Shown piece after piece: positions 16,114 to 47,534 of a DNA stretch of 64,000 nucleotides. Position 1 is the first letter of the stretch, and the number at the start of each line of letters is the position of its first letter. The stretch comes from Selaginella moellendorffii. Taxonomy: Eukaryota; Plantae; Lycopodiophyta. Location of the stretch: assembly GCF_000143415.4 (NCBI RefSeq), contig NW_003314266.1, forward strand, positions 2,947,964-3,011,963. The letters run 5' to 3'. The position numbers were made by a program, and so were the translations under genes. Under the pieces are notes generated by a model. That model saw only the letters and a program-made list of their open reading frames with translations, searched no databases and was not told the DNA's origin.

Positions 16114-16124
16114 AGGAAGCGAAA

Positions 16125-16180: not shown

Positions 16181-16219
16181 TACCGGCATATTCTGTTAAG
16201 AGATGCCGGCATATACCTT

Positions 16220-19800: not shown

Positions 19801-20064
19801 CAATGAAAACGTGAGTTTCTCAAATTTACTGAGGATTTACTAACGCCTTATGTGCATGCAGGCGATCAAGGAAACTGGAAGGCGATTCAGAGACACTGTT
19901 CTCGGGCTTGGAGGAGGCAAACCTCCTCTCGAGGTAAATTCACCCAACAAAAAGTTCTCCTTCCAACTTGTCCATCTATCCAGGTTTTCAAGAGCTTTCG
20001 CGGCAGAGAACCTTCCACTGAAGCGTTGTTGCGGCATAGTGGTCTATTGGCTGTGGCATCATAG
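16881..20064 (+). CDS. OOP: Organellar oligopeptidase A (M3 metallopeptidase), multi-exon
   Basis: Exons give NPLL..., [31 protein letters not shown] (HExxH), [49 protein letters not shown]. Transit-peptide-like N-terminus. Confidence 0.95.
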
Positions 20065-20126
20065 GACTCAAAAAATTTCAATCACTCCAAAGGTTTGAGA
20101 ATCAAAAGTTTTAATCTTCTAATGGT

Positions 20127-22109
20127 ATGAGCAGTCAAGACCCAAGAGTAAGAGAGCTCTACAGGATTGAGCAAGGGGATATAGACTTGAGTGACCACTC
20201 CTATGGGCTTCTCATCAAGAACTTCACCTCTCCCCCCCACTCACTCTCCCTCGCCAAGCGCCTCCACGCCCAGATCTCCAGACGCGGCCGCGACCACAAC
20301 ACATTCCTCGGCAACTTGCTCGTGGACATGTATGCCAAGCTCGGCAGCCTCGAGGAGGCGAGCTCGGCGTTCCAGAGAATCCAGCAGAGGAATGTTTTCT
20401 CCTGGAACATCCTCCTCGCAGCACATAGCGCGAATGGGGATCTTGCAACGGCACAGAAGCTCTTCGACAAGATGCCCGTGAGAGATACCGTGTCCTGGAG
20501 CTCCATGGTGGGAGCGTTTGCACAGCACGAGCTTTGCGACGAGGCTGTTTCGTTGTTTCGAGAGATGCAGCTGGAAGGATCCAAGCCGGACAGGATAACT
20601 TTCATCAATGTGATCGATGCCTGTGCCGAGAAGCCGGCTCTCCAAGATGGAAAGTTCGTCTACAGCGTTTTGGCCGAAGATGGATTGGAATCCGACGTGA
20701 AAGTTGGCACCGCGCTGCTTAACATGTATGGGAAGTGTGGAAGTTTGCGGGACGCGGAAGCATTGTTTGAGAAAATGCCGGAGAGGAACGCTGTCTCTTG
20801 GAACGCACTTCTTTCAGCATATGCCCAGAACGGGCATATGGAAAGTGCGAGGGAAGTGTTTGGAAGTATGCCTGAGAGGAATGTGGTGTCGTGGACGGGG
20901 ATGATGGCGGGGTATGTCCAGAACGAGCTTTGCAAGGATGCACTGGAGCTCTTTCTCTGGATGGAGAACGATGGCGTGAAGCCCAACGAGAACACTTTCA
21001 TCGCTCTTCTCGATGCCTGCGCGAGCATGTCAGCTCTTTCGCAAGGGAGAGTTCTCCACGCTCGAGTCACTGCGGTGGGATTTGATTCCAAGCTCAAGGT
21101 TGGGACTTGTGTTCTTGAGATGTATGGCAAGTGTGGTAGATTGGAAGAGGCGAGAGTGGTGTTTGACAAGATGGTGAACAAAAGTGTGATCACCTGGAAC
21201 GCGATGATCGGATCGTACTCCCGGTTTGGACACTGGAGAGAAGCTCTGCGGGTGTTCTTGGCTATGGCACAGGAAGGAGTGACGCCAACTTGGATAACTT
21301 ACATCAGCGTTTTGGTCGCGTGTAGCCACTCGGGGCTCTTGAGCCAAGGGAAGGACTACTTCACTTCTATGAGGCGGGACTTTTGCATCGATCCAACAAT
21401 CGAGCATTACCACTGCATGATCGATCTCGTTGGCCGGGCGGGAACTCTTGCCGATGCTGAAGAACTCATCCACAACATGCCGTTTCATTCGGACTCGGTG
21501 ACTTGGGCGGAGCTCGTTGCTTCTTCTCGGATTCATGGAGACTTGCCAAAGTGTGAGCGTGCTGCCGAGAATACATTCGAGATCGATCCAAGGGACCCTG
21601 CTCACGTCATTCTGTCCAACATGTATGCTGCGGCTGGAAAGCCGGCCTTGGTGAGAAAGGTGCGAAGAGACATGAAGGAGAGAGGGGTGAAGAGTAGGCC
21701 TGGGTGTAGTTTTATAGAGATTGGCAACAAAGTTCACGAGTTTGTATCGGGTGACTCGATCCATCCCTTGAACGAGGAGATCCGGGCTAAAACTCGGGAG
21801 CTCCACGAGCGGATCAAACAGGAGCTTGGGTACGTGCCAGACACGAAGGAGGTGCTTTACGACGTAGATGAGGAGGTGAAAAAGAAGATGCTGAGTTTCC
21901 ACAGCGAGAAAATGGCTATTGCTTTTGGTGTTCTTGTGACAAGAGCCGGCACACCGCTGAGGGTCGTGAAGAACCTTAGAGTGTGCATGGATTGTCACAC
22001 TTTTACCAAGCTGGTCTCCAAGTGCCTTGGAAGAGAGATTATCATGAGGGATGTCAATCGGTTCCACTCGTTCAAAGGGGGTGTGTGCTCATGTGGAGAC
22101 TACTGGTGA
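20127..22109 (+). CDS. PLS-class PPR-DYW protein (C-to-U RNA editing factor)
   Basis: Intronless 660 aa. PG box (PGCSFIE), HSEK, CMDCH zinc ligands, terminal DYW. Confidence 0.95.
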   Translation: MSSQDPRVRELYRIEQGDIDLSDHSYGLLIKNFTSPPHSLSLAKRLHAQISRRGRDHNTFLGNLLVDMYAKLGSLEEASSAFQRIQQRNVFSWNILLAAHSANGDLATAQKLFDKMPVRDTVSWSSMVGAFAQHELCDEAVSLFREMQLEGSKPDRITFINVIDACAEKPALQDGKFVYSVLAEDGLESDVKVGTALLNMYGKCGSLRDAEALFEKMPERNAVSWNALLSAYAQNGHMESAREVFGSMPERNVVSWTGMMAGYVQNELCKDALELFLWMENDGVKPNENTFIALLDACASMSALSQGRVLHARVTAVGFDSKLKVGTCVLEMYGKCGRLEEARVVFDKMVNKSVITWNAMIGSYSRFGHWREALRVFLAMAQEGVTPTWITYISVLVACSHSGLLSQGKDYFTSMRRDFCIDPTIEHYHCMIDLVGRAGTLADAEELIHNMPFHSDSVTWAELVASSRIHGDLPKCERAAENTFEIDPRDPAHVILSNMYAAAGKPALVRKVRRDMKERGVKSRPGCSFIEIGNKVHEFVSGDSIHPLNEEIRAKTRELHERIKQELGYVPDTKEVLYDVDEEVKKKMLSFHSEKMAIAFGVLVTRAGTPLRVVKNLRVCMDCHTFTKLVSKCLGREIIMRDVNRFHSFKGGVCSCGDYW

Positions 22110-30486: not shown

Positions 30487-33300
30487 GAATTGGTTTTACA
30501 ATCTACAATTGTACCACATCTTGCATTTCTACCTTTAACAACTGTTATCGAAACTAGCACCTCACTTTTTGTGTTTCCTATGCAATTGTGTTAAATGGTT
30601 CACATACTACATCAAATAAAAACCTTTTGCTTTAGTCATAAGGTAAATATCAAGAAGTTAAAAAGTATCAATATTGATGTAATAGAAACCCTTTACTTTT
30701 GTTTATGAGCAACATAACTATCAAAAAGTCTATAAGTATTAATAAAATTAACCTAGATTTATTAAGAGTATATTCACCAATAATGACCACAGTGGAAATT
30801 GAACCTTAAATCTTTACTCATGGGATTTAAATTCAACATATATCATGCACATGGATGGGTATATAAAATTAACATATGAATCTAGGACAGATGTGAAAAT
30901 TCTTCATCCAAATGAAACTTTTACTACTTCTTGGCAATCTAAAGGTAATTCCTCCACAACCAAGACTAATACCAACATCTTTTTCTATTTCTTGTTGGAT
31001 GATCTTATGCAACAATTGCAAAGGTACTTATAGGGCTAGGACAATGGGGATCTGTTAGCAAGTGAATTACAAGAGGTCACTCATCCAAAAGGATCAAAAT
31101 TTTAAGTGATTTCCTTAATATTTATATGATTTTGTGTAGGACCACAATTGGATATGTTAATTAGGAGCCTAGTTACTCAATGTGTTATAACAAGGCAACC
31201 AAGATTTGGAGATGAGAATGCCAAATGTTGGAAATTGTTCTTTAGTGTTTTTACTACTAAGTGATCTTGAGGCTAGTCTTGAACTCCTGATGGAAGAATT
31301 CTGGTGGGAGTGCAAATGTGATGGTGAATAGTTCAACAAGAATGATTGCCACTCCTTGGAAAATGAAGGTGGTGATATTTAAAGCTTAATGTGAAGTGGA
31401 TGCATAACAAAAAAATTGTAATTGCAATTTAACAAACTCTTATTTTGAAAACAAAATCAATAAAAATGAATTAATTTTTTTTATTGAATTCAGGAAAAAA
31501 AACCATATAAAAACCATGAATTTTTAATTGGTATATAGGTGGATACTAATAAGATCTCACATAGAATTAGGATCCTCAACTTACACTCACTCAAATGCAC
31601 TTTTATGCTTTGCACTTAACTAAAATAATCATTTCCTTGCCATTGTGAGTGTCAAGGATGATCATAAGGATTTGCTTGAAAAAAAGCAAATATCTTAGTT
31701 TTTTTGTTGTTTTAAGCTTGAGACCTTTAAATAACAAAAATACAAAAGATTGCATAGAAACCCCTACATATGTATACTTTCTATATTAGGAGAAAGAAGA
31801 CTTTAATCTCGAGGTTGCACCCAAGCAAGTACAAACTGTGCATGCAAATTTTCAGCACTTGATCTTATGAAGCATGATTCTTTCTTTTAGGAACAAAAAT
31901 ATAAAGCTACAAAAACATCAATGTGTAAAGGTATATAAAAAATGACATAAATATATCAGCTTTCCCACTATCCTCACCTAGCATAACAACACATGAGATA
32001 AATAACTTTATGTGCCTTTCAAAATTAAAAGCATGCTAGCAAACAATTCACTTAGAAATGTGTTTGTGTTAGTGAAACAATGTTGTAATGCTCCTCACTC
32101 CTCACAATATAATCATTGCAATAATCATGAAGCTCAAGCCAAGAAGCAAAAACCCATGAAAAAAAGTTTATATTGTCACTTTGTAACATGCATGAGTGTA
32201 ACAAACTGTTACAATGCCAAAAACTTGTGTGCATAATTAAAAATGCAAAAAGTTGATAGAATTAACCACACAATTCATTTACGCTCAAAAAAGCTATCAC
32301 TCAATGCCCCAAGCACTAAAAAAAAGGCTTTGTGCTTGCCTTCACACTTCAATCAATCACTACCTAATTTAGGATGTTATACTACAAATAAATTATATAA
32401 AAAAAGGCACACTACAACTACATTAGGGTGTGTTGTGATTTAAATGTGTTTTATTTCTCATGGCTTGATTGTAAAACTATAAAAATGAAAGGTGAATGTA
32501 ACATGCCAAAAGTATGAAAGAAATGGTTACAATCAGAAAATCATAAATTTGCATTCAATGATATAAAAATGAGACAAAAAAATCCTTCCTAAATTTGTAA
32601 TGATATCATGTTATCTGAGATGATGTGGCATTATTTTTATATGGTAGTTTGAGGTGTTATGCCCCAATCTCACGACAAAACAATCAAAATGTGATTGTGT
32701 GTATAATACTTTTGCATAGAACTCAAAATAAAATATAATATATATATATATATCCACACATGTGTAAATATATAATGTTCCAGTCTGCAATTATATATTC
32801 ATTGCCATAGGTAATAAAAAATGCAAAAAATTATCACATATGTAAATATAAAATAAAACCATATACAATCACATTTTGTTTGCCAAAGGTGTGAACCACT
32901 TCTTATAAATTACATATGCATTTTCTATGTAGTGTATGCTAATAGTTGATAAGAATCCACCCTACCATTGCCACTGCTATAATCATTATTGCTGTTACTT
33001 GGTGTGCAAGTAACGCAAACATTGGTGAAAATCCAATGCCCTGCAAAGGAAAGACTCTACCACCATAATCTTCTTATCCCATATAATAGTTTTTTATGTT
33101 GTGAATATTCTTTGTAGCTTAAATGTGTTTCTAAACGTCATATACCACAAACAATGTGACAATCACATTAAACATGATTGTCACCAATTTAATATTAAAA
33201 TATAAAATATAGCCACATTTGCCTGCCATAGATTGCACAGTGTCTTTAATTTGTCTTATTAGTGTTTTGTGAAAGGAAAACGCAGAAAATGATTAAGTAT
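30350..33300. mobile_element. AT-rich decayed repeat/TE-like block
   Basis: Composition and absence of ORFs only; no family motif recognised. Confidence 0.35.
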
Positions 33301-33546
33301 CCATTTATTCTCTTGAGTTCTTGTTTCTATTTGTTTCAAGTATTTTTGAACTTGTATAATTGTTGACATTTACCTTTGATGGTTGTGATGAAAGCAAAAG
33401 GGTTTCTAGTTGATGCAATATGTCAACCGTTTAAATATAAATTTCCAGGGCTCTCTAGGAATTTGCATCCAAGTGATTGCTCAAGCTGTTGGAGCTCAAG
33501 AAGAGCTTGGGATCGAGATGAGGGCGTGCCGATTGCATTGCCAAGC

Positions 33547-33768
33547 NNNNNNNNNNNNNNNNNNNNNNNNNNNNNNNNNNNNNNNNNNNNNNNNNNNNNN
33601 NNNNNNNNNNNNNNNNNNNNNNNNNNNNNNNNNNNNNNNNNNNNNNNNNNNNNNNNNNNNNNNNNNNNNNNNNNNNNNNNNNNNNNNNNNNNNNNNNNNN
33701 NNNNNNNNNNNNNNNNNNNNNNNNNNNNNNNNNNNNNNNNNNNNNNNNNNNNNNNNNNNNNNNNNNNN
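33547..33768. other. Assembly gap
   Basis: Run of N. Confidence 1.
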
Positions 33769-34533
33769 AGTTCATGTAATTTAGCTGAATTTCTACAAAT
33801 TTTCTTTTAATTTATGTCATGTCTCGCATTCCTTTTGTCTCTCTGCTGTTCAGAGGTCTCAGGCTCAACTAGCACGAATGCTTTAGGTGCCCCTGTAGCT
33901 CCTCGGGCCACGGGAATCTCTGCCAAGTTCTCATTGGGTGACAACGAAAGGGTGGTAATCTCAAACTCGTACAATTGCGTGGCTCAACGTCGGCGATCAA
34001 GGTCGCGGGTGATGCCCTGGCATTGTGATGCAAAACAAGGTGTAGCTTTACAAGAAAAGCTGCCACTTCGTGGTTAGAGAGGCAGCCGAAGAGTTTGAAG
34101 TTCTAGAAGAATCCGGGATGTTTAGCTTGAATAAGTGAATCGTGCATTGTGTCACTGGTGAGCGCCAGCAAGAGAACATGCCACGCTCCAAATATCAGCT
34201 TAATCCTTCCCTCTTCAAAGCTGGAAAACGCAGCAAAAGAAGAAGAAATTTGTTTCTTACCTCGAGCTTTTCCCCCAAAATCCTCATGATCGTCCTTGAC
34301 ACTTCGCAGTGGCAAGGAAACGACCATTCTGGCTAAGCGCCAAGCACGAAAGTGTGTCTGAGTGAGCGTAGATCTAGAAGGGATACCCGTGAGCAACATG
34401 AACACAAAGGAATCGCGAGAATATCCAGGACACTAGAAGTTTATAAGTGGTGACGGATTTCCTCGCCGTCTCGTTTGCCCAGACATAAACACATCACAAA
34501 ATAAAGCTCACGATAAAATCTATGATGTTATGA

Positions 34534-34836
34534 ATGTATGACATTCTTTTGGTTGTGGATTTTTCTTATGCTTTGGAGACTAAGCTTGAGAATGTGATGA
34601 AGGAGAAGTTTTATATCACTCAGAGTATTGCGGCTTTTAAGGAGCAACTCCAAATACATGAAATAGTTGACTATAGAAACTTCGATGTGGTGTGGCTGGT
34701 GAAAAAACTAGAGAAACAATATGGCCATGCAGTTTTTGTCACCATTACTGTTCAATCTTATGCTTTTAGTTGGGTGCCTTCCAGCTTGATAGGAAAAGTG
34801 TGGAACAACAATGCAATGCGATTTTTGTCACTATAG
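34534..34836 (+). other. Possible uncharacterised coding exon or gene fragment
   Basis: 100-aa ORF with protein-like composition (HEIVDYRNFDVVWLVKKLEKQYG); family not recognised. Confidence 0.25.
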
Positions 34837-34890
34837 TTCGATTTTTCATTCATTAGAATATTCCACGACTGTCGATTATTTCGAAGGGCT

Positions 34891-37350
34891 CTACCAGTAG
34901 TCTCCACAAGAACACGCACCATTCTCAAAGTGGTGGAAGCGTATAGCATCACGAACAACGATCTTCCGCCCCACAACCTTGGAGATGGCCTTGACGGCTG
35001 CATGGCAATCAAAGCACACGCGGAGGTTCTTGACAATGTGGAGCGCAGTTCCTGGCGGAGTGGAGATCAGCCCAAACGCGATCGCCAGCCTCTCACTGTG
35101 GTACCAAAGCAGCTGCTCCTTCTCCTCCTCCTCCACGTCCCGAAGAACAGCTCTCACGTCAGCGACATAGCCCGCCTCCTTGACTCGCGCCTTGAGCCTC
35201 TCGATCTCTGCGTGAATCCTCCCGAGCTGCGGGTGGAGCTTCTGCGCCGCCATGAACTCGTGGACGCGATCCTTCACTTCGATGCTGCTCAATCCCGGCT
35301 GCTTGGTTATCCCCCTGAGTCTCATCGCCTTCCTCGTTCTCCTGGCCTCGTCCATCCTCCCGGTCGAGGAGTAGAGGTTTGAGAGCAGTATGTAAGGCCC
35401 CGAGTCCTCTGGATCCAGCTCGTAGATAAGCTCCGCGATGCGAGCCCCTCGATCGACGTCTCCGTGCATCCTACATGCGCCTAGGAGAGCTAGCCACGCC
35501 GAGGAGTCGGGCTCGTATGGCATGCTGTTGATGAGATCTTCGCTGAGCTGCAACTGGCCGGACCTTCCCAGGAGATCGATCAAGTTGAGGTAGTGCTCAA
35601 ACACCGGCACCACTCCAAAGTCGCGTATCATCGAGACGAAGTAGTCCACCCCGTCCATGGAGCGACCGGCGTGGCTGCATGCGAAGAGGAGGCCGAGAAA
35701 GGTGATGCCGTTCACTTCCAGGCCGCCTTGAACCATCTCGTGGTAGAGCTCGATAGCCTCCGTCTCGTAGCCGTTCTGTGCGTAAGCAGCGAGTATGGCG
35801 GACCAAGTCACGGTGTTTTTCTTTCCCAGGCTGTCGAAGATGGCTCTTGCGTTATCCAGTCGCCCACATTTGCCATAGAAGTGCATGACCGCCGTGCCGA
35901 GAGCCACGTCCATGGGAATCCCGCTTGCGGTAATGTCGTCGTGGACCATCCGGCCTTCCGTGTGTGCTGCTAGAGCCGCGCAAGCGTCGATGATGGTGAG
36001 AAACGTCACTGCGTCTGGCTGAACCCCTTCCAAGTCCATGAATCTGAACACCTGGATGGCCTTCTTGCACTGCCAGTTTTGAGAGTAGACCGCCACCATG
36101 TTGTTCCAAGTCACCAAGTTCTTCCGAGGTAGACTGTCGAACACGGCCCTGGCAGCGTCCACGTTTTTACACTTCCCAAACATGTTGACGAGCGACGTCC
36201 CCACCATGGTATCGGACTCGAGCCTCTTGTCCACAGCTATAGCATGGACGATCCGGCCTTCTTCTTCGGATGGAAGACTGGCACAGGCGTCGATTGCGTT
36301 GATCAGAGTGACTTGGTTCGCTATCACACCCTCTAAGTCCATGGTCTTGAAGAGGTGGAGAGCTTCCTTGCCTAGACCGTTTTGCGTGTAAGCTCCAATG
36401 ATGCCGTTCCAGGAGATCACGTCCCTGTTCTCCATTCTGTCGAAAAGTACCCGAGCTTCGTTCATGTTTCCATCCTGAGCGTATGCCACCACCATCATGT
36501 TCCACGTTGCAGTGTTGCGCTGAGGCATGTCGTCAAAGAGTTGTCTTGCTTCCACCAGGCGACCGTTTTGAGTGTAGGCCGTGACCAAAGATGTCCAGGA
36601 AATCACGTCCCTCCTGGTCATCGTATCGAATGCCTGCTTCGCCTTGCCCAAGCAGCCACACTTGCCATAGAGGTTGATGATGGCGTTGCCGACGTCCACA
36701 TCTAGATGCAAGCCGTGGAAAACTGCCCTGGCATGATACGTCTTTCCAAGAACCAAGTTCCGGATGTTCGAGCAGGAGTTTAAGATGCAGACGAAAGTGA
36801 TCCGGTTTGGAGAGACGCCTTCTTGATCCATCATGCAAACCAGCCTGATAACTTCGTTTCCTGGCGAGCCCGTGATGATGGTGTTCCATGAAGCAACGTC
36901 CCTTGCCGGCATTTCATCGAAGAGAAGCCTCGCTTTGTGTTGATAACCATACTGGCAATATGCTGTGATCATCGTGTTCCAGGACACTGTGTTCCGATCC
37001 GGGTTCCGACCAAAGATTTCTTCTGCCTCTTCCAGATGACCGTTTCGGATGAAGACCGTCATCATGATGTTCCAGGAAAACGCGTTCTTTTCCTGAATCT
37101 GGTCGAACACTGACCTCGCCTCTGCAATGCCCCCACACTTGCCATACATCTCGATAAGCAGATTCGCGATGAGTCTGTCACTGGCATATCCATCCTTGAC
37201 AAGGCAAGAATGGACCCGCTTGCCCTCCAGCAGGGCCTTCGAGTCGGCGCATTTCTTGAGAAGCAAGACGTAAGTCGAGATTTCTTCTCGCCGCTCATCA
37301 ACTGTCCTGTTACCATTTGCAGCTGACCATCCCGCAGTAGCGACGCCCAT
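34891..37350 (-). CDS. PLS-class PPR-DYW protein
   Basis: Intronless 819 aa. PGLSSIE, HSERL, CFDCH, terminal DYW. Confidence 0.95.
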   Translation of the reverse strand: MGVATAGWSAANGNRTVDERREEISTYVLLLKKCADSKALLEGKRVHSCLVKDGYASDRLIANLLIEMYGKCGGIAEARSVFDQIQEKNAFSWNIMMTVFIRNGHLEEAEEIFGRNPDRNTVSWNTMITAYCQYGYQHKARLLFDEMPARDVASWNTIITGSPGNEVIRLVCMMDQEGVSPNRITFVCILNSCSNIRNLVLGKTYHARAVFHGLHLDVDVGNAIINLYGKCGCLGKAKQAFDTMTRRDVISWTSLVTAYTQNGRLVEARQLFDDMPQRNTATWNMMVVAYAQDGNMNEARVLFDRMENRDVISWNGIIGAYTQNGLGKEALHLFKTMDLEGVIANQVTLINAIDACASLPSEEEGRIVHAIAVDKRLESDTMVGTSLVNMFGKCKNVDAARAVFDSLPRKNLVTWNNMVAVYSQNWQCKKAIQVFRFMDLEGVQPDAVTFLTIIDACAALAAHTEGRMVHDDITASGIPMDVALGTAVMHFYGKCGRLDNARAIFDSLGKKNTVTWSAILAAYAQNGYETEAIELYHEMVQGGLEVNGITFLGLLFACSHAGRSMDGVDYFVSMIRDFGVVPVFEHYLNLIDLLGRSGQLQLSEDLINSMPYEPDSSAWLALLGACRMHGDVDRGARIAELIYELDPEDSGPYILLSNLYSSTGRMDEARRTRKAMRLRGITKQPGLSSIEVKDRVHEFMAAQKLHPQLGRIHAEIERLKARVKEAGYVADVRAVLRDVEEEEKEQLLWYHSERLAIAFGLISTPPGTALHIVKNLRVCFDCHAAVKAISKVVGRKIVVRDAIRFHHFENGACSCGDYW

Positions 37351-40300
37351 CTAATCGTCGTCATCTGTGATTGTGAAGGCCCTTCTTTTGGCTGGCTTCG
37401 GTATGGCTTCAGCTTCGGTACCTGCTAAATCCTCCAAGTCCATCATGTCCTGGCTAGCGTCGTCAGCAGTTTGGTGTTTCACCAGTCTTTTCTTTCTGTT
37501 TACAGGGTGCCCTGGAGGAACGTCGAGCCTGAAAGAAGCGCTAGGAAGTTGGCGTCTTGATAAATTGGCAAGTTACAACTTACACTTCCTGAAGGTCCAC
37601 TTCCGCATCGGATGGCAACCTGTTTTCCTCCACGTAGTCAGCGTTGTTAGCAGCAGGTAGTGTTCTGTTCTCTGTATCTCCCTTCTCAAGGTCACCTTCA
37701 TCGTCATCTTCTTCTGATTCAGTCCACCCCTGATTGTCTTCAGAACTCTCACCGTCCTCCCTGCAAACGTCATGAGAAATCTATAAATCAATCAAGCTTT
37801 TGAACTGACCATTCATTCAAAGGCTGGACGCCGTCGTGATTGCCCTTATCTAACTCGTCGTCCTCCATATCGTCATTCCTGTGACAAATGTTTTGCAGCT
37901 TCTGAGTGTGATGGTAAAAGGCTTACCTGTCAGCGTCAATTGGACTTGTTCCATCAGCGTGAATGTGAGATGGTGTAGTCCCGTTACGATGTAGACCGAG
38001 CTGTTTTAGCTTTCTTGTTACTTGCGCACTGGATATCTTCCCATCGCTATCCAATGCTCCTGCAATCAGTTTGGAGCAGCTACGCTTGTGCTTAAACCTG
38101 AAACAAAACATCCTCCAGGTGTTAAAGAAAATTAAGGTAAAGTCTTACTGTTGGAAAAGCTCAATAATGCGCTTTTCATCTTCCTCATTGAAAGGACCCC
38201 TTCTGCGTTTCTTGGGCACAGGTACTGTTCTATGAGCAACTCCTCGTTCGCCAATAATACTAAGAAGAGGAAAGTCAAGGAACGAACCTAAGTATAGGAA
38301 AATGTACCTCGTGGATTCAGAAGCCAGGTTGACAAAACCATCATCAGCTTCTTCTTGAAGAGCGTCCGCAAGGCAAGTAATAGATGTATCCCCTTCGAAC
38401 TCGTAATCATCGGCAATGTCACGGGATGATTCACGGCTTCTTGTAAACAGCACATCCACGTAAAGCCAAGGATTCGACTTCAGTTTCTTGAAAAAGTTAC
38501 GAACGACTTTGTTGATGAAGGAGATGAGGAATTTGTACTCTTCTAGTTTTTGAAGTTTTTCATCCAAAAGGATGGTTTCAAAGGTTTCAAGGATTGAAAT
38601 CTGCAATATTCAGGCTTAAAACGAATCAATTCGGAAAACAAACTCGACAGACCTCGTATAGCAAGGGCTCCAGCTCGCAATCTTTGCATATCCGGTGGAG
38701 CATACAAACGATGTAATAATTCAAGGCAGGGCTGTTGGACTGGTAGAATGTCAGGAGCCAGCAATAGTTGGAAACGGTTGTACTGTCTGCAAACGTATTA
38801 ACGCATTTGAGGACGTTAAAAGTGCCTTCTCGCGTTGAAACATTATCATGGTCGTCTTGGAGGTCGTCAAGCAGTGGCTCTGCTTGCGCCTGCTCCTTAT
38901 CACCTCCCGCCTGCTCCTGATCACCCCCCGCCTGCTCCTGATCTCCTCGCAAAATGTCGTTATTTTCCTCTAGTGAAGCCTTCGACGCTTCAATACTCTC
39001 AGGTCCCGCATCTGATAAATCTTTAGAGTCATCCTGTTTTTTCCTGGATGCTTTATTTCGAGCCTTTTGGACAACCTGCTCCAAAATACATCTCAAATTT
39101 GCGATATAGAGGCATTTATTTAACTTACTCTCAAAGCACCGTCTTCCTGGATTGTATTTTCCATCAGTTTCAATGCGACATGAGTAATTTCGACCATGTT
39201 CTCAAGATATCTACATGGACAAAAATATGCATTCTTTTAAAGTTTCAAATAAATTCCCTTTACCTCCGAGGTTGTTTGTAGTTGTTGAATGCCTTGATTG
39301 ATCTACAGCATGTATTCAAGATGCCTCTTTCGGTCTGATCATAGAAAACCTTATAAGTAAGCGTCCTAGCAGTGCGAACATCACGATTGGAGAAATTTGA
39401 CCGTTTCTTGAGCACTAAATCCAGAATATGAATCTAGAAAAGAGAAAACAGAAAAGAAAGAATAAGCCGACACTACGAGGGAACTAGGCTTACCATCTCT
39501 TTTAGCAGGGAAACAACCGCGACAACCGGGATCCAGTCATTAGGAGATTTAGCAGCTTCCGTATAATCATGCCATTTTGATACAACCATCTGAAACGTCT
39601 CTTCATTCATTGTACATGAAACATGACCACAGACTGAATCTGATAAAGCACTTTCATCTGCCTGTCAAAGGTAGTAAGGAACAGAACTCAAGTAAAGACA
39701 ACTTACAAGTGTTTTCAGAAGCTTATAGCGTTGATAGCTTAGAAAAAATTCAGCAACTTCATAAAAGGTAACAAAATCAGAAGTCTCAATCTCTCGCCGT
39801 TCTCTTTCAACATCTTCCTGGAAAGTCTGTACCAAGACTGGAAAGAAAAGAAAAAGTAATAGAACAGATTGGAATCAAAATTAACGTACTGTTATATGCT
39901 CCCGTTTCTAAAAACTGATCAGCATAGTCCTTTAGCGAGACGCTGATATCGTCTCGAGAAGGTAAAGGGACGTTGATATCGCGAGCAAACTTTTCTTCAG
40001 GTTCCTCGACTTGTGGACACTTCTTACTGGTTTCATCCGCTGCTTGAAACGGGCTTGTCAGAACCATTTTTCTGGTACCGTCCTGTCTCCATTAAAAATT
40101 ATAGAGTAATGCTAAGAAACTTTTCGGCACCTTGTCAACACGAACAAATGTCCCAGAGAAGTGTGTGCGGCGGTGCATGTTCTTCCGTCGCATTTCATTT
40201 AAAGCATTTGAACTTGTCTCCTTTGTCTGATATTGCAGCTCAGTAAACAACCGACTTACAAATAAAAGACGAAACTACACACCTTTCTCGATGCTTGAAA

Positions 40301-41350
40301 GAGCAACTCTGGTTTTTGACCCCAGAACATATGGTGTAGAATCTGAATAATAAGGAAGTTATCCTTCCGGATGCCATTTTTGAAGGCGGGCAAATACTTC
40401 GTAACGGCTAGGACGATGTCCGGTCCGCACTCGCGAAACAAACTCTCGAGAATACCATCTCGCAGTTGAGAGTACCGCTCGGCAGGGTAAGGACCAACCC
40501 AGTTCATAGCTTCTGGTACAGCCAGAAGGTTCTGAATGAAAGCGAGCACCAGCTGCAAAAGCCTCCAGTCATCTTCACTGACAGAGCCCCTACAAGAGCA
40601 TAAAGACAAGTTATGAAAAGCAGGCATCAAAAGCTAAGCACATACTTTTCCAAATGCCTGAGAGGTTCTTCTAGATGTGCGATAATTGCCCCGAGAACAT
40701 TGCGTTCGCGAAACTCTTCTTTGATTTGGCACAGGTACTCTACTTGGTCGAACGTGTTGGTGGAGTTTTGATCGATGGGAAGAGTGAGGAGAATCGACAC
40801 CTTCACTGGAAAAAAGAAAAAATGAAAAATGTAAGCCATGAAGAACGAAAAACACGACAGGAATGGGACTAACACGATGCAAGAAAGAGATGACGATCTT
40901 CCGAATAGTGCTGTATGATCGGTACCAAGTACTTCCCCGCGACATTCCATTGCCCAAGCTGCATAAACACACGCCTGCTATCCGGATTGTCTCTCGTCAA
41001 GCACCGCTGAAGCTCCCTCAGTTTTTCTGTGGGAGTGAACGAGCAAAATAAGCATAAACTCCTCCAGCCATGAAATCCATACCTAAGCAGTGAGATCCCT
41101 TGACGAAAACCTCCGATCCTTGGTGCCAATCGTCGCTGCCGCTCGTCTCGAACGCTCCAATCCCCGAAACAATGGAAGCTAACCTCCGCTCGTCCGTCGT
41201 CTCCAGCTTCTTCTGGATCTCCTCATCCTGCTTGCGCGCGCCCTGTGACCAGGGCGCATACACCAGCACTGGCGCCGCGGCATTCTTCCTCGTCGCCTTC
41301 TTCTCGGCGTCGTCGCCCCTTGGCGGGCTGGACGCCGCCTCGTCCTCCAT
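37351..41350 (-). CDS. TIM: TIMELESS/Tof1 replication-fork protection protein, multi-exon
   Basis: Exons give LRELQRCLTRDNPDSRRVFMQLGQWNV, ILLTLPID, LVLAFIQNLLAVPE, RHTLLWDIC, NYYIVCMLHRICKDCELEPLLYE, QVTRKLKQLGL, and end KRRAFTITDDDD* (TAG 37351-37353). Confidence 0.9.
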
Positions 41351-43365: not shown

Positions 43366-45276
43366 CTAAGATCCCGCATAGAGGTTGTGGAGAAGCCTGT
43401 AAAGCTTCTGGTGGTTCTTATAAGACGTCGCGTTTGCGGCAGCACGGGCCCCGAGATGAACGTCCCCTTGGCTTCTACAGGCTCCAAGCAAAGTAAACCA
43501 GGCTGCGTCACGACCTTCAACAGCTCCACTATCGGGTGATCTTTTCAATAAGTTTATGATTCTCTCGGCTTCTCCAACTTGTCCAGACCGCCCGAGAGCG
43601 TCGACCATGCAACAGTAGTGCTCCGAGCTTGGTCTCAATCCTCGCTCGCTCATCGATGCAAACTGGATCAAGCAATCCTCTAGCTTCCCGACTTGACAGA
43701 GCGCTGTGAGAAGGCCGAGGAAAGTTACCTCGTCCGGCTCCACACCACTGAGATCCATCTCCTGGAACAGCTCAATCGCAACCTCCTCGCAACCATTCTC
43801 GGCATATCCTTGCAAAAGCGTCGTCCACGAATAAACATTTGGTTCAGGGATCTCGTCAAAGAGTTTCTTCGAGTAGGAAAGATGCCCGTTCTGGGAATAT
43901 GCTGCGACAATGGCACTCCAGGCTCTTATGTCTTTGTAGCTCATGGCATCGAACACATGTTTTGCTTCAGCGAGATTCCTGTCCAAGGAATATGCGCCGA
44001 TCATGGCAACACATGCCACGGAATCGTAGTGAGGCATTCTATCAAATAGATCTCGCGAATCTTCCACATACCCTTGCCGGGCATAGACGGTTACTATTGC
44101 GTTCCATGCTATAAGATCCCTACTGGGCATTATATCAAACATCCACCTGGCATTCTCCAATTGGCTGCACTGCGCAAACCCCAAGAGCATACACGTCCAT
44201 GTAATCAAGCTTCTCTCGGGCATTTTGTTAAATACAGTCTTCGCTTCGTCTAGATACCCGTACTGCGTATAAATCTGTATCATCGTGTTCCACGTGGAAA
44301 GATTCCTATAAGGTATGGCCTTGAATAGATTCCTTGCTTCGTCCAGCCGTCCATGCTGTACGTGCGCCGTGATCATGCAGTTCTGTGATACCACATCCCA
44401 ATGCGGCATATTATCGAAAAGGAGAACAGCATTTTCTAGATGCCCATTTTGGGCATATGCTCTCACCATAGCGGTCCACGCCACTACATTCCTATACTCC
44501 ATGTTGTCAAAGATTCCTTTTGCCTGAAGTACGTCACCAGCGTCTCCGTACCCAGCCACCATAATGGTCCATAGCACTAGATCAAAATGGGCCACAGCTT
44601 CGTACAGGGATCTCGCCTCAAGCATATGCCCATTGCGGGCATATGCCTCAACCAGCGCAGTTACCGCAAGAATATTCGACCCAATAATTTCGGGCATTTG
44701 CTCAAACGTTTGGACAGCCCTTCCAAGCGCGCCAAAATAACTGTAGGCGCGAATCATGGTCATCCACGTCACAACGTCCTTTTGTGGCGCTCTCTGAAAG
44801 AGATCCTCGGCATCTAGAAGATGCCCACTCTGGGCATATGCCACGAGCATGGTGTTCCAGGAGACTATGTCCTTGTAGGGCATCTGGGCAAAGAGATTCT
44901 CGGCATCTTCCAGGTAGCCGTTGGATGCGTAGGCGGTGACGATGCTGTTCCATGAAACGGTGTTCTTGGCGGGCATGGCATCGAAACAAGCCCTAGCGCG
45001 ATCGATGTGCCCGTTGCGGGCAAAGGCGGTGAGTAGGATGTTCCAGGAGAAGATGTTTGGCGCGGCAATGGCCGCGAAGGCGGCGGCAGCGTCGGCGACG
45101 CTCCCGCATTTGCCGTAGGTCTTGACGAGCAGATTCGCAAGGTAGACGCTGGATCGATGGCGAGCGCTGGCCTGGATCTTGGCGTGGATCTGGCGGCAGT
45201 CCTCGGCATGGCGGCAGTCGCGGATCGATCGCGCCAGGAGCGTGGCCTCGTCGCGAATTTCGAGAGGCGAGGTCAT
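43366..45276 (-). CDS. PLS-class PPR protein dominated by 31-aa S/SS motifs, with E domain, no DYW
   Basis: Intronless 636 aa. Long array of xWNxMxxAYAQNG...A..LF..MP units; AWFTLLGACRSQG. Confidence 0.92.
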   Translation of the reverse strand: MTSPLEIRDEATLLARSIRDCRHAEDCRQIHAKIQASARHRSSVYLANLLVKTYGKCGSVADAAAAFAAIAAPNIFSWNILLTAFARNGHIDRARACFDAMPAKNTVSWNSIVTAYASNGYLEDAENLFAQMPYKDIVSWNTMLVAYAQSGHLLDAEDLFQRAPQKDVVTWMTMIRAYSYFGALGRAVQTFEQMPEIIGSNILAVTALVEAYARNGHMLEARSLYEAVAHFDLVLWTIMVAGYGDAGDVLQAKGIFDNMEYRNVVAWTAMVRAYAQNGHLENAVLLFDNMPHWDVVSQNCMITAHVQHGRLDEARNLFKAIPYRNLSTWNTMIQIYTQYGYLDEAKTVFNKMPERSLITWTCMLLGFAQCSQLENARWMFDIMPSRDLIAWNAIVTVYARQGYVEDSRDLFDRMPHYDSVACVAMIGAYSLDRNLAEAKHVFDAMSYKDIRAWSAIVAAYSQNGHLSYSKKLFDEIPEPNVYSWTTLLQGYAENGCEEVAIELFQEMDLSGVEPDEVTFLGLLTALCQVGKLEDCLIQFASMSERGLRPSSEHYCCMVDALGRSGQVGEAERIINLLKRSPDSGAVEGRDAAWFTLLGACRSQGDVHLGARAAANATSYKNHQKLYRLLHNLYAGS

Positions 45277-45479: not shown

Positions 45480-47261
45480 ATGGAAGACGAAGAAGGGGCG
45501 CGCGATTCTACCAGTGGGAGAAAAAAGGCCACGGCAAGGTCGGCGCTCCTCGCTCTCCTAGACGCGGGGTTTTGCCGATTGGAAGAGCTCTCGCGAGTGC
45601 CACAGAAGGACGTCTTGGCGGCCGCGCACAGGCACAGCAGTGGCACGGTTTTTGGCTGGCTTATCGGGCTGGGTTTGATCGCCGAGCAGGAGAAGGTGGT
45701 CTACATCGGTGGGACGAAGCGATTCCGGCACCTTCTGAAGGAAGGAATGGTAACCAGCGATGGGCTTGTGTGTAGCTGCTGTGATGAGCTCTTCAATCTC
45801 TCGGGCTTTGAGGCTCACACCGGGAGCAAGCTTCGCCGACCGGCAGCCAACATCTTCGTGGGCGATGAGGCCCAGCTCTCCATCGCCGACTGCCAGAATG
45901 TAGCTTTCAAGATGGAGACTTTGGAATCACTACCGGTGCCCATGGCGAGTGTGGAGGAGATGGAGCGACGCGATGAGAATGAGGAGGAGGAGGAGGAGCT
46001 TCCCAGCAGCAAAAGGACCAAGCTTGACGAATCCTTTGGTACGTCGCCTAGCGTAGAAAAGGAAAGCTTTGCTTGCCAGACCAACTGCGATCCTTTCGAG
46101 TCGTGTGACTACTCGAAGATGCTCCCGCCGCTGGAAGCAAAGGCCGAGCTTTTCAACAGCGAGGGGCTTCCAGTGGCTCGCAGGCGGAAGTTCGATAGCT
46201 ACTGCCAGAGCGACGAGGACTCGGGCCTCACCACTGTCTCCTCCGGAAGCGACGTAGACTATGAGGCCGCCGCGAACAGCGATCAATGCTGCGGGATTTG
46301 CAACGAGGGTGGCGAGCTCGTGTGCTGCGAGACGTGCCCGTTAACTTTCCACATGGAATGCGTATCGCTGCTCGAAGTTCCCAAGGACGCCTGGTTCTGC
46401 TTTCGGTGCCTTTGCTGCCACTGCGGCGAGCCCCTGAGGACGCAGCCGTGCGAGCAGTGCGAGCGGTGCTTCCACCCGGGCTGCTGCGACGACGCCATCC
46501 TGGCCGGGGACTTTTTCTTCTGCTCCTCGGGCTGCTGGAACCTTTTCCAGAGGCTCGCGGAGATGGTGGCGACGGTGAATCCGCTGGGGCGATCGGAGCT
46601 CTCGTGGAGCTTGCTGAGGCGGGGCCGCTGCGACGACAAGCTCCTGGCGGAAGCTCTCCAGCTGATCTCGAGCCGGTTTGATCCGGTGCTGGATTGCTGG
46701 ACGCAGCTCGACTACCTGGATGCGATGGTGTTTAGCCGGAGCCACCACTCGCCGAGGCTCGACTTCAGCGGCTTCTACACGGCGGTGCTCCAGAGGGGGG
46801 CGGAGGTGGTCGGGGTGGCGGTGCTGAGGATCCACGCGGCGTGGCTGGCGGAGATGCCGTTCATTGCAACCAAGGCGGGGATGGAGGGGCAGGGGATTTG
46901 CCGCAGCCTCTTCACCGCGGTGGAGGAGATGCTGGCGCGGCTGGGCGTCGAGACGATGGCGCTACTAGCGGCAAAGGACACGGAGAAGATGTGGAAGAAC
47001 TCGTTCGAGTTCCACGCCGTGGATCGCAAGCTCAAGGCCCAGACGGTGGCGCTCGGCCTGGTGGCGCTCAATGGAGCGGGCTTCTTGCAGAAGAGCGTGG
47101 GCGTGGGCGAGAGGGGGTCGGATCATGAGGCGGCGGCGGAGGAGGTGGTGGTGGCGGCGAAGAAGCGGCGGCGTGGGAGGCCGAGGAAGGAGCAGAGCGA
47201 TGCGCCGGCAACGCCGCCAGCGACCAGGGCGAGGCCTCCGAGAGCAACCGAGGTTCACTAG
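45480..47261 (+). CDS. IDM1-like chromatin protein: TDBD/Tify-binding-like domain + PHD finger(s) + GNAT acetyltransferase + C-terminal AT-hook, intronless
   Basis: EGMVTSDGLVCSCC..LSGFEAHTGS, CGICNEGGELVCCETCP..FH..C PHD, RLDFSGFYTAVL, AEMPFIAT..GQGICR GNAT, RGRPRK. Confidence 0.88.
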   Translation: MEDEEGARDSTSGRKKATARSALLALLDAGFCRLEELSRVPQKDVLAAAHRHSSGTVFGWLIGLGLIAEQEKVVYIGGTKRFRHLLKEGMVTSDGLVCSCCDELFNLSGFEAHTGSKLRRPAANIFVGDEAQLSIADCQNVAFKMETLESLPVPMASVEEMERRDENEEEEEELPSSKRTKLDESFGTSPSVEKESFACQTNCDPFESCDYSKMLPPLEAKAELFNSEGLPVARRRKFDSYCQSDEDSGLTTVSSGSDVDYEAAANSDQCCGICNEGGELVCCETCPLTFHMECVSLLEVPKDAWFCFRCLCCHCGEPLRTQPCEQCERCFHPGCCDDAILAGDFFFCSSGCWNLFQRLAEMVATVNPLGRSELSWSLLRRGRCDDKLLAEALQLISSRFDPVLDCWTQLDYLDAMVFSRSHHSPRLDFSGFYTAVLQRGAEVVGVAVLRIHAAWLAEMPFIATKAGMEGQGICRSLFTAVEEMLARLGVETMALLAAKDTEKMWKNSFEFHAVDRKLKAQTVALGLVALNGAGFLQKSVGVGERGSDHEAAAEEVVVAAKKRRRGRPRKEQSDAPATPPATRARPPRATEVH

Positions 47262-47372
47262 GAATCCCACTCGGCATATACGATTTTTGAATATCGGATA
47301 TTCATTATGTTCCATGCCACGTGGAGATACTGGCTGACACTTGGCCAGCGGGTGGCAGAGGCCACGAACCAA

Positions 47373-47472
47373 NNNNNNNNNNNNNNNNNNNNNNNNNNNN
47401 NNNNNNNNNNNNNNNNNNNNNNNNNNNNNNNNNNNNNNNNNNNNNNNNNNNNNNNNNNNNNNNNNNNNNNNN
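47373..47472. other. Assembly gap
   Basis: Run of N. Confidence 1.
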
Positions 47473-47534
47473 AACAACGCATATTATTTGAAATTCGAAT
47501 ATTCTCAGCTTTGTTTTCCCGCGGGATTAACAGT

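What the first reader, a model, noticed from the sequence alone, without database searches (positions are those of the whole stretch)
37340..37365. Zero-gap, in-frame stop-start junction: TIMELESS TAG is immediately followed by the ATG of a PPR-DYW gene
Seen: the minus strand reads ...ACA GAT GAC GAC GAT TAG ATG GGC GTC..., so the TIMELESS stop (37353-37351) directly abuts the start (37350) of an intact 819-aa DYW deaminase PPR, in the same frame. There is no room for a TIMELESS 3'UTR/poly(A) site or a separate PPR promoter. Inference: either a bicistronic nuclear mRNA with termination-reinitiation, stop-codon readthrough giving a TIMELESS-PPR-DYW fusion (a deaminase on a nuclear fork protein), or a PPR promoter embedded in TIMELESS coding exons. 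The PPR N-terminus also shows no obvious organellar transit peptide.
Basis: partly seen in the sequence, partly recalled or inferred. Interest (0 to 1): 0.85.

Follow-up and report, generated by a model that had tools for sequence, protein, structure and literature searches.

The report
TIMELESS stop abuts PPR-DYW start
In the spikemoss Selaginella moellendorffii the stop codon of the replication-fork gene TIMELESS is followed, with no base between, by the start codon of an organelle RNA-editing (PPR-DYW) gene, and assembled RNA runs across the joint; the two genes must therefore share or overlap their transcripts, but whether one message makes both proteins is not shown.

Summary
On the minus strand, TAG (37353-37351) is followed directly and in frame by ATG (37350-37348).

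- **The TAG is the real TIMELESS stop.** Thirteen RNA-supported GT..AG introns of 45-60 nt give 825 open codons ending there. The tail ...KRRAFTITDDDD* matches the conserved C-terminal end of other land-plant TIMELESS proteins.
- **The ATG opens an intact gene.** It starts an intronless 819-aa PPR-E-DYW gene. Between haplotypes this gene shows 14 synonymous and 6 non-synonymous differences.
- **The junction is already annotated.** The locus is Selaginella moellendorffii GL377570.1, where GenBank lists the two coding sequences as abutting. The second haplotype has the same TAGATG.
- **RNA crosses the joint.** Spliced RNA contigs from four studies run unbroken across it, although contigs cannot prove a single molecule.
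- **Some mechanisms are excluded or unsupported.** Leaky scanning from the TIMELESS cap is excluded (54 AUGs, no depletion). I found no Rfam element, no unusual fold, no known readthrough context and no fusion protein.
- **Tight packing is normal here.** Other same-strand gaps in this window are 7, 62 and 135 nt.

Best reading: overlapping or nested transcription units in a very compact gene cluster. True termination-reinitiation stays open at about 0.2. The scan has noted the other-haplotype copy of this junction and similar zero-spacer pairs elsewhere in this genome.

The parts
37351..41350 (-). TIMELESS/Tof1 homologue, multi-exon gene (annotated product 1049 aa). Exons from 40499 down to 37351 are verified by RNA joints.
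   Evidence: Pfam TIMELESS hit in the exon ORF 40256..40630. The GenBank model has PF04821 and PF27570. 13 GT..AG introns of 45-60 nt are supported by RNA contigs, and 825 codons stay open.
37351..37528 (-). Last TIMELESS exon. It encodes ...VNRKKRLVKHQTADDASQDMMDLEDLAGTEAEAIPKPAKRRAFTITDDDD plus the stop.
   Evidence: Joint 37528/37584 is seen in all four runs. The tail is conserved in land-plant TIMELESS. There is only 1 difference between haplotypes.
37351..37353 (-). TIMELESS stop codon TAG
   Evidence: Identical in haplotype B.
37348..37350 (-). PPR-DYW start codon ATG (context UAG AUG G: U at -3, G at +4)
   Evidence: RefSeq and GenBank use the same start in both haplotypes. The next in-frame ATG is codon 67, inside the first repeats.
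34891..37350 (-). Intronless PPR-E-DYW gene, 819 aa plus stop (a candidate organelle C-to-U RNA editing factor)
   Evidence: Pfam. RNA contigs are colinear with the DNA over the whole ORF. The haplotype comparison gives 14 synonymous and 6 non-synonymous changes plus 1 codon indel.
34894..35172 (-). DYW cytidine-deaminase domain (residues 727-819) with HSE and CxDCH motifs and the terminal DYW
   Evidence: PF14432, profile positions 1-93 of 93, E 2.1e-43. Sequence.
37303..37347 (-). Variable N-terminal 15 codons of the PPR. Differences to haplotype B are G2D, A10V, one silent change and an AGG (Arg) codon insertion.
   Evidence: The same variants appear in RNA contigs of runs X1 and X7.
37441..37446 (-). 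Two in-frame AUGs (37446, 37443) in the last TIMELESS exon. They would open a 31- or 30-codon mini-ORF ending at the TAG next to the PPR AUG. The AUG at 37443 has A at -3 and G at +4.
   Evidence: Any role in reinitiation on a nested PPR mRNA is inference only.
37362..37364 (-). Out-of-frame AUG 14 nt upstream of the PPR AUG. It opens a 100-codon ORF overlapping the PPR start and is a potential obstacle for ribosomes scanning to the PPR AUG.
34661..34890 (-). The first AT-rich stretch downstream of the TIMELESS stop. It is the likely shared 3' end / poly(A) region.
   Evidence: There is no AATAAA or ATTAAA, and no 40-nt window with at least 70% AT, between 37351 and 34891. AT-rich windows begin at 34882. 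RNA contigs end at 34884, 34869, 34827 and 34661.

Best explanation
Two separate, functional nuclear genes of Selaginella moellendorffii have been packed together until no spacer is left, so their transcription units overlap.

**Shown:**
- The TAG is the native TIMELESS stop.
- The adjacent ATG opens an intact PPR-E-DYW gene whose body is under purifying selection.
- Both haplotypes keep the junction.
- Assembled, spliced RNA is continuous from the TIMELESS exons through the TAG|ATG to the end of the PPR gene.

**Inferred:**
- TIMELESS pre-mRNA is not cleaved at its stop. It runs into, and probably through, the PPR ORF to the AT-rich region just after the PPR stop. The long RNA is therefore structurally dicistronic and yields TIMELESS only.
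- The PPR protein is made from a shorter nested mRNA. Its start site would lie inside the 3' exons or introns of TIMELESS, driven by a weak TATA-less internal promoter.
- On such an mRNA the strong in-frame AUG at 37443 would open a 30-codon mini-ORF that ends at the TAG. Ribosomes could then resume at the adjacent AUG. This last step is speculation.

The zero spacer would be the end point of deletion-driven compaction. It is tolerated because neither gene needs the DNA between them.
For: - **Frame and stop:** open through 14 exons to the TAG, with a conserved TIMELESS tail.
- **PPR gene:** intact domains. It differs between haplotypes by 14 synonymous and 6 non-synonymous changes, and 2 of the non-synonymous changes plus the indel fall in the first 15 codons.
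- **Junction conservation:** the same TAGATG on the second haplotype scaffold and in the RNA alleles.
- **RNA continuity:** contigs from four studies run 34661/34827/34869..37527 and continue spliced into TIMELESS. A short contig in X7 (37279-37727) bridges the last intron and the junction.
- **3' end:** no poly(A)-like AT-rich segment lies inside the PPR ORF. The first one begins right after the PPR stop.
- **Local packing:** same-strand CDS gaps of 7, 62 and 135 nt, start codons of divergent genes 71 nt apart, and a convergent stop-to-stop gap of 88 nt. Overlapping UTRs must therefore be routine here.
- **Coverage:** the two fragmented assemblies (X6, X7) show about twofold higher k-mer depth for 34.8-38.09 kb than for upstream TIMELESS exons. 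This fits an extra nested transcript, or simply 3' bias.
- **Lineage:** the moss Ceratodon has no PPR within 10 kb downstream of TIMELESS, so the pairing is not an ancient functional unit.
Against: - No transcription start site, poly(A) site or single-molecule read was available. Contigs merge overlapping transcripts and cannot show starts, ends or strand.
- No TATA-like element lies between 37351 and 38200.
- A TIMELESS mRNA with a 3'UTR of about 2.5-2.7 kb would be expected to attract nonsense-mediated decay in plants (general knowledge), yet RNA is present at similar depth.
- Any nested PPR leader that starts more than 14 nt upstream carries an out-of-frame AUG (37364) that should depress PPR translation.
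Confidence: 0.55

Rival explanations
1. This is a genuine bicistronic mRNA with translational coupling. Ribosomes finishing the TIMELESS ORF at UAG keep their 40S subunit on the RNA and reinitiate at the adjacent AUG, so PPR-DYW output is tied to TIMELESS expression.
For: - A zero-spacer stop-start is the ideal geometry for termination-reinitiation.
- Continuous spliced RNA crosses both ORFs in four studies.
- No poly(A)-like region separates the ORFs.
- The junction is identical in both haplotypes while the next 15 codons vary.
- Scan notes report further stop-start overlaps with a PPR downstream in this genome (ATGA, TGATG). These are leads that I did not test.
- Reinitiation would bypass the out-of-frame AUG at 37364.
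Against: - By general knowledge, and as discussed in PMC11892635, reinitiation efficiency falls steeply with upstream ORF length. Here that ORF is 1049 codons.
- No Rfam element and no unusual fold sit at the junction (z = 0.21).
- Green-algal bicistrons work by leaky scanning with short, AUG-depleted ORF1 (median 291-357 nt). Here the last 2479 nt of TIMELESS mRNA hold 54 AUGs, with an observed/expected ratio of 1.22.
- Gaps of 7-135 nt between ordinary neighbours show that compaction alone produces near-zero spacers.
Confidence: 0.2
2. The two mRNAs are both monocistronic and overlap only briefly. TIMELESS mRNA is cleaved and polyadenylated at a non-canonical site within the first few hundred bases of the PPR ORF, and PPR mRNA starts in the last TIMELESS exon or intron.
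For: - Plant poly(A) signals are degenerate (general knowledge).
- Contig continuity needs only overlaps of 31 nt.
- This avoids a very long TIMELESS 3'UTR.
Against: - No AAUAAA or AUUAAA, and no 40-nt window with at least 70% AT, occurs anywhere in the 2.46-kb PPR ORF.
- The PPR ORF is 51-60% GC.
- No contig breaks or depth steps appear in the PPR 5' part in any of the four runs, apart from an allelic branch at 37279-37308.
Confidence: 0.17
3. Stop-codon readthrough of UAG yields a 1869-residue TIMELESS-PPR-DYW fusion protein, which would place a deaminase on a fork-protection protein.
For: The two ORFs are in the same frame, separated by a single stop.
Against: - The shared frame has a 1 in 3 chance expectation.
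- UAG followed by A, with no downstream structure, matches none of the plant and viral readthrough contexts I know of (UAG-CAA-UUA; UGA-CGG or UGA-CUA; UAG-G plus a pseudoknot), and the fold z-score is 0.21.
- The native TIMELESS C-terminal acidic tail is conserved as a free end across land plants.
- No TIMELESS-PPR fusion appears among 89 relatives of a TIMELESS exon or 9 relatives of the protein. The long 1611-aa hit has no PPR.
- The first 15 PPR codons, which would be the linker, are the least constrained part.
Confidence: 0.03
4. The adjacency is meaningless because the PPR ORF is an untranslated relic in the TIMELESS 3'UTR, or because it is an assembly or annotation artefact.
For: - The N-terminus lacks an obvious targeting peptide.
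- There is no close orthologue outside this species in the database (best about 43% identity).
Against: - The 819-codon ORF is intact in two independently assembled haplotypes and in RNA alleles.
- Outside the first 15 codons there are 13 synonymous and 4 non-synonymous differences.
- All DYW catalytic motifs are intact.
Confidence: 0.03

Closest known systems
Overlapping or multigene transcription in compacted eukaryotic genomes (microsporidia, nucleomorphs; recalled from the literature, not re-read here)
   Same: Loss of intergenic DNA forces the transcripts of neighbouring same-strand genes to start in or run through one another. Assembled or cloned cDNAs span more than one ORF, and each ORF is thought to be translated from its own transcript.
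   Different: S. moellendorffii has a roughly 100-Mb land-plant genome with ordinary spliceosomal genes and AT-rich repeat islands. The compaction is local to gene clusters. Here the spacer is exactly zero and the upstream gene has 14 or more exons.
Polycistronic-like (multi-gene-spanning) nuclear transcripts of Populus (bioRxiv 10.1101/2025.07.17.665350)
   Same: This is a land plant in which RNAs span two adjacent nuclear genes. Organelle-associated genes are over-represented, and monocistronic counterparts coexist.
   Different: The Populus transcripts were shown with single-molecule nanopore reads, whereas here only contigs are available. The abstract does not mention abutting stop and start codons.
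Green-algal bicistronic loci translated by leaky scanning (PMC7896298, PMC11892635)
   Same: Two conserved ORFs on one strand with a very short inter-ORF distance, and RNA covering both.
   Different: Algal ORF1 is short (median 291-357 nt), has a weak Kozak context and is depleted of AUGs. TIMELESS is 3.1 kb and its last 2479 nt hold 54 AUGs (observed/expected 1.22). That mechanism cannot apply from the TIMELESS cap.
Viral termination-reinitiation at overlapping or adjacent stop-start signals (calicivirus TURBS, influenza B M1/BM2 UAAUG; recalled, not tested)
   Same: A long upstream ORF ends at or next to the AUG of the downstream ORF.
   Different: Those systems need an upstream RNA motif that tethers the 40S subunit by pairing with 18S rRNA. 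No such element was identified here. There is no unusual fold, and 18S complementarity could not be tested because no 18S sequence was in hand.
CDC26-TTM3 bicistronic transcript of land plants (recalled from the literature)
   Same: A nuclear plant mRNA that carries two conserved ORFs for unrelated proteins.
   Different: There the upstream ORF is a tiny protein that is bypassed or reinitiated like a uORF, and the pairing is conserved across embryophytes. Here the upstream ORF is 1049 codons and the pairing is absent from the moss Ceratodon.

Membership tests
PPR-DYW (PLS-class) organelle RNA editing factors | Tandem PPR (P/L/S) repeats | tested here: met
   PF01535 E 5.7e-76, PF13041 E 1.8e-75, with many stretches across residues 25-620.
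PPR-DYW (PLS-class) organelle RNA editing factors | C-terminal E motif followed by a complete DYW deaminase domain with the zinc-binding HxE and CxxC signatures | tested here: met
   PF20431 at residues 629-691. PF14432 at residues 727-819, covering profile positions 1-93 of 93, E 2.1e-43. HSE, CFDCH and the terminal DYW are visible.
PPR-DYW (PLS-class) organelle RNA editing factors | N-terminal mitochondrial or plastid targeting peptide and organelle localisation | tested here: inconclusive
   Only about 24 residues (MGVATAGWSAANGNRTVDERREEI) precede the first repeat, and they contain acidic residues. No targeting predictor was available. Other PPR ORFs in the window are equally short at the N-terminus.
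PPR-DYW (PLS-class) organelle RNA editing factors | C-to-U editing of a defined organelle site | not testable with these tools
   Needs a knock-out, or heterologous expression with a target.
TIMELESS/Tof1/Swi1 fork-protection proteins | N-terminal TIMELESS domain and TOF-1-like helical region | tested here: met
   PF04821 in the exon ORF 40256..40630. PF04821 and PF27570 are recorded on the annotated 1049-aa product.
TIMELESS/Tof1/Swi1 fork-protection proteins | Plant-type C-terminus: a basic patch followed by a terminal acidic run | tested here: met
   Alignment A2 with six land-plant TIMELESS proteins. The basic patch and terminal acidic run are shared by five of them, and Riccia ends differently.
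Bicistronic nuclear mRNA (two proteins from one message) | Single capped, polyadenylated RNA molecules that contain both complete ORFs | tested here: inconclusive
   Contigs from four studies span both ORFs (X1: one 5357-nt contig), but contigs merge overlapping transcripts. No raw or long reads were available.
Bicistronic nuclear mRNA (two proteins from one message) | No independent transcript start for the downstream ORF | not testable with these tools
   Needs CAGE, 5'RACE or direct RNA sequencing.
Bicistronic nuclear mRNA (two proteins from one message) | Leaky-scanning type: a short, AUG-poor ORF1 with a weak start context | tested here: not met
   ORF1 is 1049 codons. There are 54 AUGs in the last 2479 nt, with an observed/expected ratio of 1.22. 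Compare the algal values.
Bicistronic nuclear mRNA (two proteins from one message) | Both proteins translated from that message | not testable with these tools
   Needs Ribo-seq, proteomics or reporters.
Termination-reinitiation (TURBS-like) coupling | Stop and restart codons overlapping or adjacent | tested here: met
   UAG|AUG with zero spacer.
Termination-reinitiation (TURBS-like) coupling | An upstream RNA element that retains the 40S subunit (18S rRNA complementarity or a defined structure) | tested here: inconclusive
   No Rfam match at or above its gathering score, and an ordinary fold energy (z = 0.21). 18S complementarity was not tested.
Programmed stop-codon readthrough | A leaky stop context or a stimulatory downstream structure | tested here: not met
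   UAG AUG GGC matches none of the known plant or viral contexts (recalled). There is no significant structure.

The most novel reading that the evidence does not exclude
PPR-DYW translation may be coupled to termination at the TIMELESS UAG. Ribosomes would reinitiate either after the full 1049-codon ORF on a true bicistronic mRNA, or after the 30-codon in-frame mini-ORF (AUG 37443) on a nested mRNA. Taken with the other stop-start PPR junctions noted in this genome, this would make termination-reinitiation a recurrent way for a land plant to express organelle RNA-editing factors from the 3' ends of unrelated host genes.
Probability: 0.2. Interest if true: 0.75.

Novelty: new member of a known kind. 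Interest (0 to 1): 0.45.

Why it matters
If the PPR is made from a nested transcript, this locus is a clean example of how far gene packing can go in a vascular plant. A coding exon would double as the neighbour's promoter and leader, and a whole gene would double as a 3'UTR. That matters for annotating S. moellendorffii and for reading RNA-seq counts at such pairs.

If translation is coupled at UAG|AUG, it would be a cellular plant case of termination-reinitiation after a long ORF, which I know of so far mainly from viruses. It would also link the supply of an organelle editing factor to a replication gene. Either way the locus is easy to test, because the junction is sharp, conserved in both haplotypes and expressed.

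Tried and rejected
1. **Different splicing of the last TIMELESS exon, so that the TAG is not the stop.** Rejected. All four runs share the 37528/37584 joint, the frame is open to the TAG, and the tail is conserved.
2. **A PPR insertion that truncated TIMELESS.** Rejected by the same conserved tail.
3. **Splicing that skips the TAG.** No joint was seen within 34661-37527. The joints listed there (35582/36568, 36587/37133) have only 20 nt on one side and come from paralogous PPR transcripts. By eye, a GT at about 37420 joined to an AG at about 37305 would be out of frame.
4. **Leaky scanning.** Rejected because of the AUG load.
5. **A known RNA element or strong structure at the junction.** None found.
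6. **Orthologous junctions in other species.**
   - There is no close PPR orthologue (best about 43% identity).
   - No other Selaginella TIMELESS is in the protein collection.
   - The Diphasiastrum TIMELESS could not be placed on a contig.
   - The moss Ceratodon has no PPR downstream of TIMELESS.
7. **Fusion proteins.** None were found among the TIMELESS relatives.
8. **Literature.** I found no paper on nuclear bi- or polycistronic genes in Selaginella.
9. The joined spliced TIMELESS model was never sent to a search tool. It was used only inside local scripts to check frame and count AUGs, and the database search used a single exon by reference.
10. **Limits of the RNA evidence.** The one read-laying run served only contigs, so starts, ends, strand and levels of the RNAs remain unknown.

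Full report
**Observation**

On the minus strand the window reads ...ACA GAT GAC GAC GAT TAG ATG GGC GTC.... TAG lies at 37353-37351 and ATG at 37350-37348, in the same frame with nothing between them.

The ATG opens an 819-codon ORF at 34891..37350. Pfam finds many PPR repeats, an E motif and a complete DYW deaminase domain covering profile positions 1-93 of 93 (E 2e-43). The HSE and CFDCH zinc motifs and the terminal DYW are present. A TIMELESS-domain exon lies upstream on the same strand (ORF 40256..40630).

**Whose genome, and what is annotated**

An exact look-up places the PPR on scaffold GL377570.1 of Selaginella moellendorffii (GCA_000143415.2). The deposited models there have a 1049-aa TIMELESS/TOF-1-like product ending on the base before the 819-aa PPR begins. 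The abutment is therefore already in the public annotation, though I found no paper that discusses it.

The second haplotype scaffold, GL377598.1, carries the same pair with the same coordinates touching. Its PPR is XP_024537969.1, 820 aa. An alignment of the two junction regions shows an identical TAGATG, one difference in the 178-nt last TIMELESS exon, and four differences in the first 50 nt of the PPR, including an in-frame AGG codon insertion.

**Is the TAG really the TIMELESS stop?**

Logan contigs of four runs from four studies were laid on 34500-40499. They lack thirteen short segments of 45-60 nt. After the stated cut shifts, each segment begins with GT and ends with AG on the minus strand, so the contigs come from spliced RNA.

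Joining the exons at these joints in a local script gives 825 codons with no internal stop. The frame ends at exactly this TAG.

A single-exon search of the representative protein library returned land-plant TIMELESS proteins. Their C-terminal ends align with the Selaginella tail:

| Species | C-terminal end |
|---|---|
| S. moellendorffii | ...PKPAKRRAFTITDDDD* |
| Diphasiastrum | ...PKTSRRKGFVIDEDD* |
| Manihot | ...RRKLRMVVDFDDDD* |
| Amborella | ...KRKMIIYDDDDAE* |

The stop is therefore the ancestral one. TIMELESS has been neither truncated nor extended by its neighbour.

**Is the PPR a live gene starting at this ATG?**

Between haplotypes the ORF differs at 14 synonymous and 6 non-synonymous codons, plus one codon indel. 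Two of the non-synonymous changes and the indel lie in the first 15 codons. The body of the gene is therefore under purifying selection, roughly 13 synonymous to 4 non-synonymous over 804 codons. The extreme N-terminus is relaxed.

The next in-frame ATG is codon 67, inside the first repeats, so M1 is the only start that gives a complete protein. Both GenBank and RefSeq use it.

About 24 residues precede the first repeat and do not look like a presequence. The same is true of two other PPR ORFs in this window, starting at 20127 and 45276. The second of these faces a divergent gene about 200 nt away and so has its own upstream region. The missing transit peptide is real but is not a property of the junction.

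**What the RNA shows, and what it cannot show**

In all four runs a contig is colinear with the DNA from just past the PPR stop (34661, 34827, 34869 or 34884), across the TAG|ATG, to 37527. It then continues spliced into the TIMELESS exons. In run X1 a single 5357-nt contig covers the PPR and TIMELESS up to beyond 40499. In the shallow run X7 a 397-nt contig (37279-37727) bridges both the last intron and the junction.

RNA therefore reads across the junction. However, contigs fuse any transcripts that overlap by 31 nt, and they show no starts, ends or strand. A single dicistronic molecule is not proven.

Two fragmented assemblies (X6, X7) have about twice the k-mer depth over 34.8-38.09 kb that they have over upstream TIMELESS exons. 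This fits an additional shorter transcript, but also plain 3' bias.

The joints listed inside the PPR ORF have only 20 nt on one side. They belong to paralogous PPR transcripts.

**Sequence clues to mechanism**

- **No poly(A)-like region inside the PPR.** Between the TIMELESS stop and the PPR stop there is no AAUAAA or AUUAAA and no 40-nt window with at least 70% A+T. The first such window begins 9 nt after the PPR stop, where the contigs end. TIMELESS transcripts therefore more probably run through the whole PPR gene than stop inside it.
- **Leaky scanning is excluded.** The last 2479 nt of spliced TIMELESS mRNA hold 54 AUGs, with an observed/expected ratio of 1.22. Scanning from the TIMELESS cap, which is the mechanism established for green-algal bicistrons with their short, AUG-depleted ORF1, cannot reach the PPR AUG.
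- **No special RNA element.** The junction has no Rfam match at or above its gathering score, and its fold energy equals that of shuffles (z = 0.21).
- **No readthrough context.** UAG-A is not one of the leaky contexts I know of.
- **No fusion proteins.** No TIMELESS-PPR fusion protein exists among the relatives retrieved.
- **AUGs in the last TIMELESS exon.** The exon holds two in-frame AUGs (37446 and 37443, the latter with A at -3 and G at +4). They would open a 30-31-codon mini-ORF ending at the TAG. It also holds an out-of-frame AUG at 37364, whose 100-codon ORF overlaps the PPR start. On a nested PPR mRNA, short-ORF termination next to the PPR AUG could help ribosomes reach it. That is conjecture.

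**Context**

The neighbourhood is extremely compact. From the deposited models:

| Gene pair | Arrangement | Gap |
|---|---|---|
| RPL14 and the ASY3-like gene | same strand, stop to start | 7 nt |
| ASY3-like gene and a PPR | same strand, stop to start | 135 nt |
| Peptidase M3 and a PPR-DYW | same strand, stop to start | 62 nt |
| RPL14 and Peptidase M3 | divergent, start to start | 71 nt |
| PPR-636 model and the PapA_C-like gene | convergent, stop to stop | 88 nt |

Three of the five PPR ORFs in the window sit 0-135 nt behind an unrelated same-strand gene. Overlapping UTRs must be the rule here, and a zero gap is the end of that distribution.

Notes from this scan list the other-haplotype copy of this junction. 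They also list further zero-spacer or overlapping pairs in this genome (COX16/PIG-P, ALP1-like/PPR, tRNase Z/PPR). One follow-up concluded that docked PPR genes are tightly packed rather than dicistronic. I treated these as leads. I verified only the other haplotype and the pattern inside my own window.

The moss Ceratodon has no PPR within 10 kb downstream of its TIMELESS gene. No other Selaginella species was available. The pairing is lineage-specific as far as can be seen.

**Verdict**

| Reading | Estimate |
|---|---|
| Overlapping or nested transcription units: a long TIMELESS RNA that contains the PPR ORF as its 3' part, plus a shorter PPR mRNA starting inside TIMELESS | 0.55 |
| Real termination-reinitiation bicistron | about 0.2 |
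| Brief overlap, with a cryptic poly(A) site inside the PPR | about 0.17 |
| Readthrough fusion | about 0.03 |
| Dead or artefactual PPR | about 0.03 |

The locus is a new example of a known kind of arrangement: multi-gene-spanning or overlapping nuclear transcripts, now described in Populus and in green algae. It differs from the algal bicistrons in having a very long upstream ORF. It deserves moderate interest, mainly because long reads, cap mapping and a simple reporter would settle the mechanism.

The pieces were searched apart.

Noticed in passing
window 15098-16809 (minus strand); L003 4972-6683: The deposited models put the stop of a ribosomal protein L14 gene (173 aa) only 7 nt before the start of an ASY3-like gene (233 aa). 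The stop of that gene is in turn 135 nt before a 618-aa PPR with a long R/S-rich N-terminus. This makes a three-gene same-strand chain with almost no spacers.
   Followed up: partly
window 16881-22109 (plus strand): A Peptidase_M3 / thimet-oligopeptidase-like gene (784 aa) stops at 20064, and a 660-aa PPR-E-DYW ORF starts at 20127, a gap of 62 nt. Its start codon is also only 71 nt from the divergent RPL14 start codon.
   Followed up: partly
L002 2503-5544 (haplotype B, GL377598.1): A run of 3042 N interrupts the TIMELESS gene in the second haplotype. This explains the truncated or split public models there (816, 596 and 141 aa) against 1049 aa on haplotype A.
   Followed up: yes
window 37879-37926 and 38098-38148: In run X6 the contigs retain these two TIMELESS introns, while the other runs splice them. 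One X6 contig ends at 38086, where depth halves. This could be unspliced precursor or a hint of an internal start.
   Followed up: no
window 37529-40282: All 13 verified TIMELESS introns are tiny (45-60 nt, 26-42% GC) with canonical GT..AG ends.
   Followed up: yes
window 30500-34000: A block with very low GC (26-33%) separates the GC-rich gene clusters (47-60% GC). Composition switches abruptly at about 34000 and about 30500.
   Followed up: no
window 43366-45276 (minus strand) and 45480-47261 (plus strand): A 636-aa PPR ORF without a DYW domain faces a 593-aa ORF, whose deposited model (363 aa) carries PHD, TDBD and IDM1_C hits, across about 200 nt. This is a compact divergent pair. The deposited PPR model is 536 aa, shorter than the ORF.
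   Followed up: no
window approx. 47370-47477: A run of N (an assembly gap) lies inside the window. It shows up as X residues in an ORF translation.
   Followed up: no
L005 16759-20151 (Ceratodon purpureus, downstream of TIMELESS): Two long ORFs (722 and 399 aa) with no Pfam match and no called gene lie downstream of the moss TIMELESS gene. They are possibly a mobile element.
   Followed up: no
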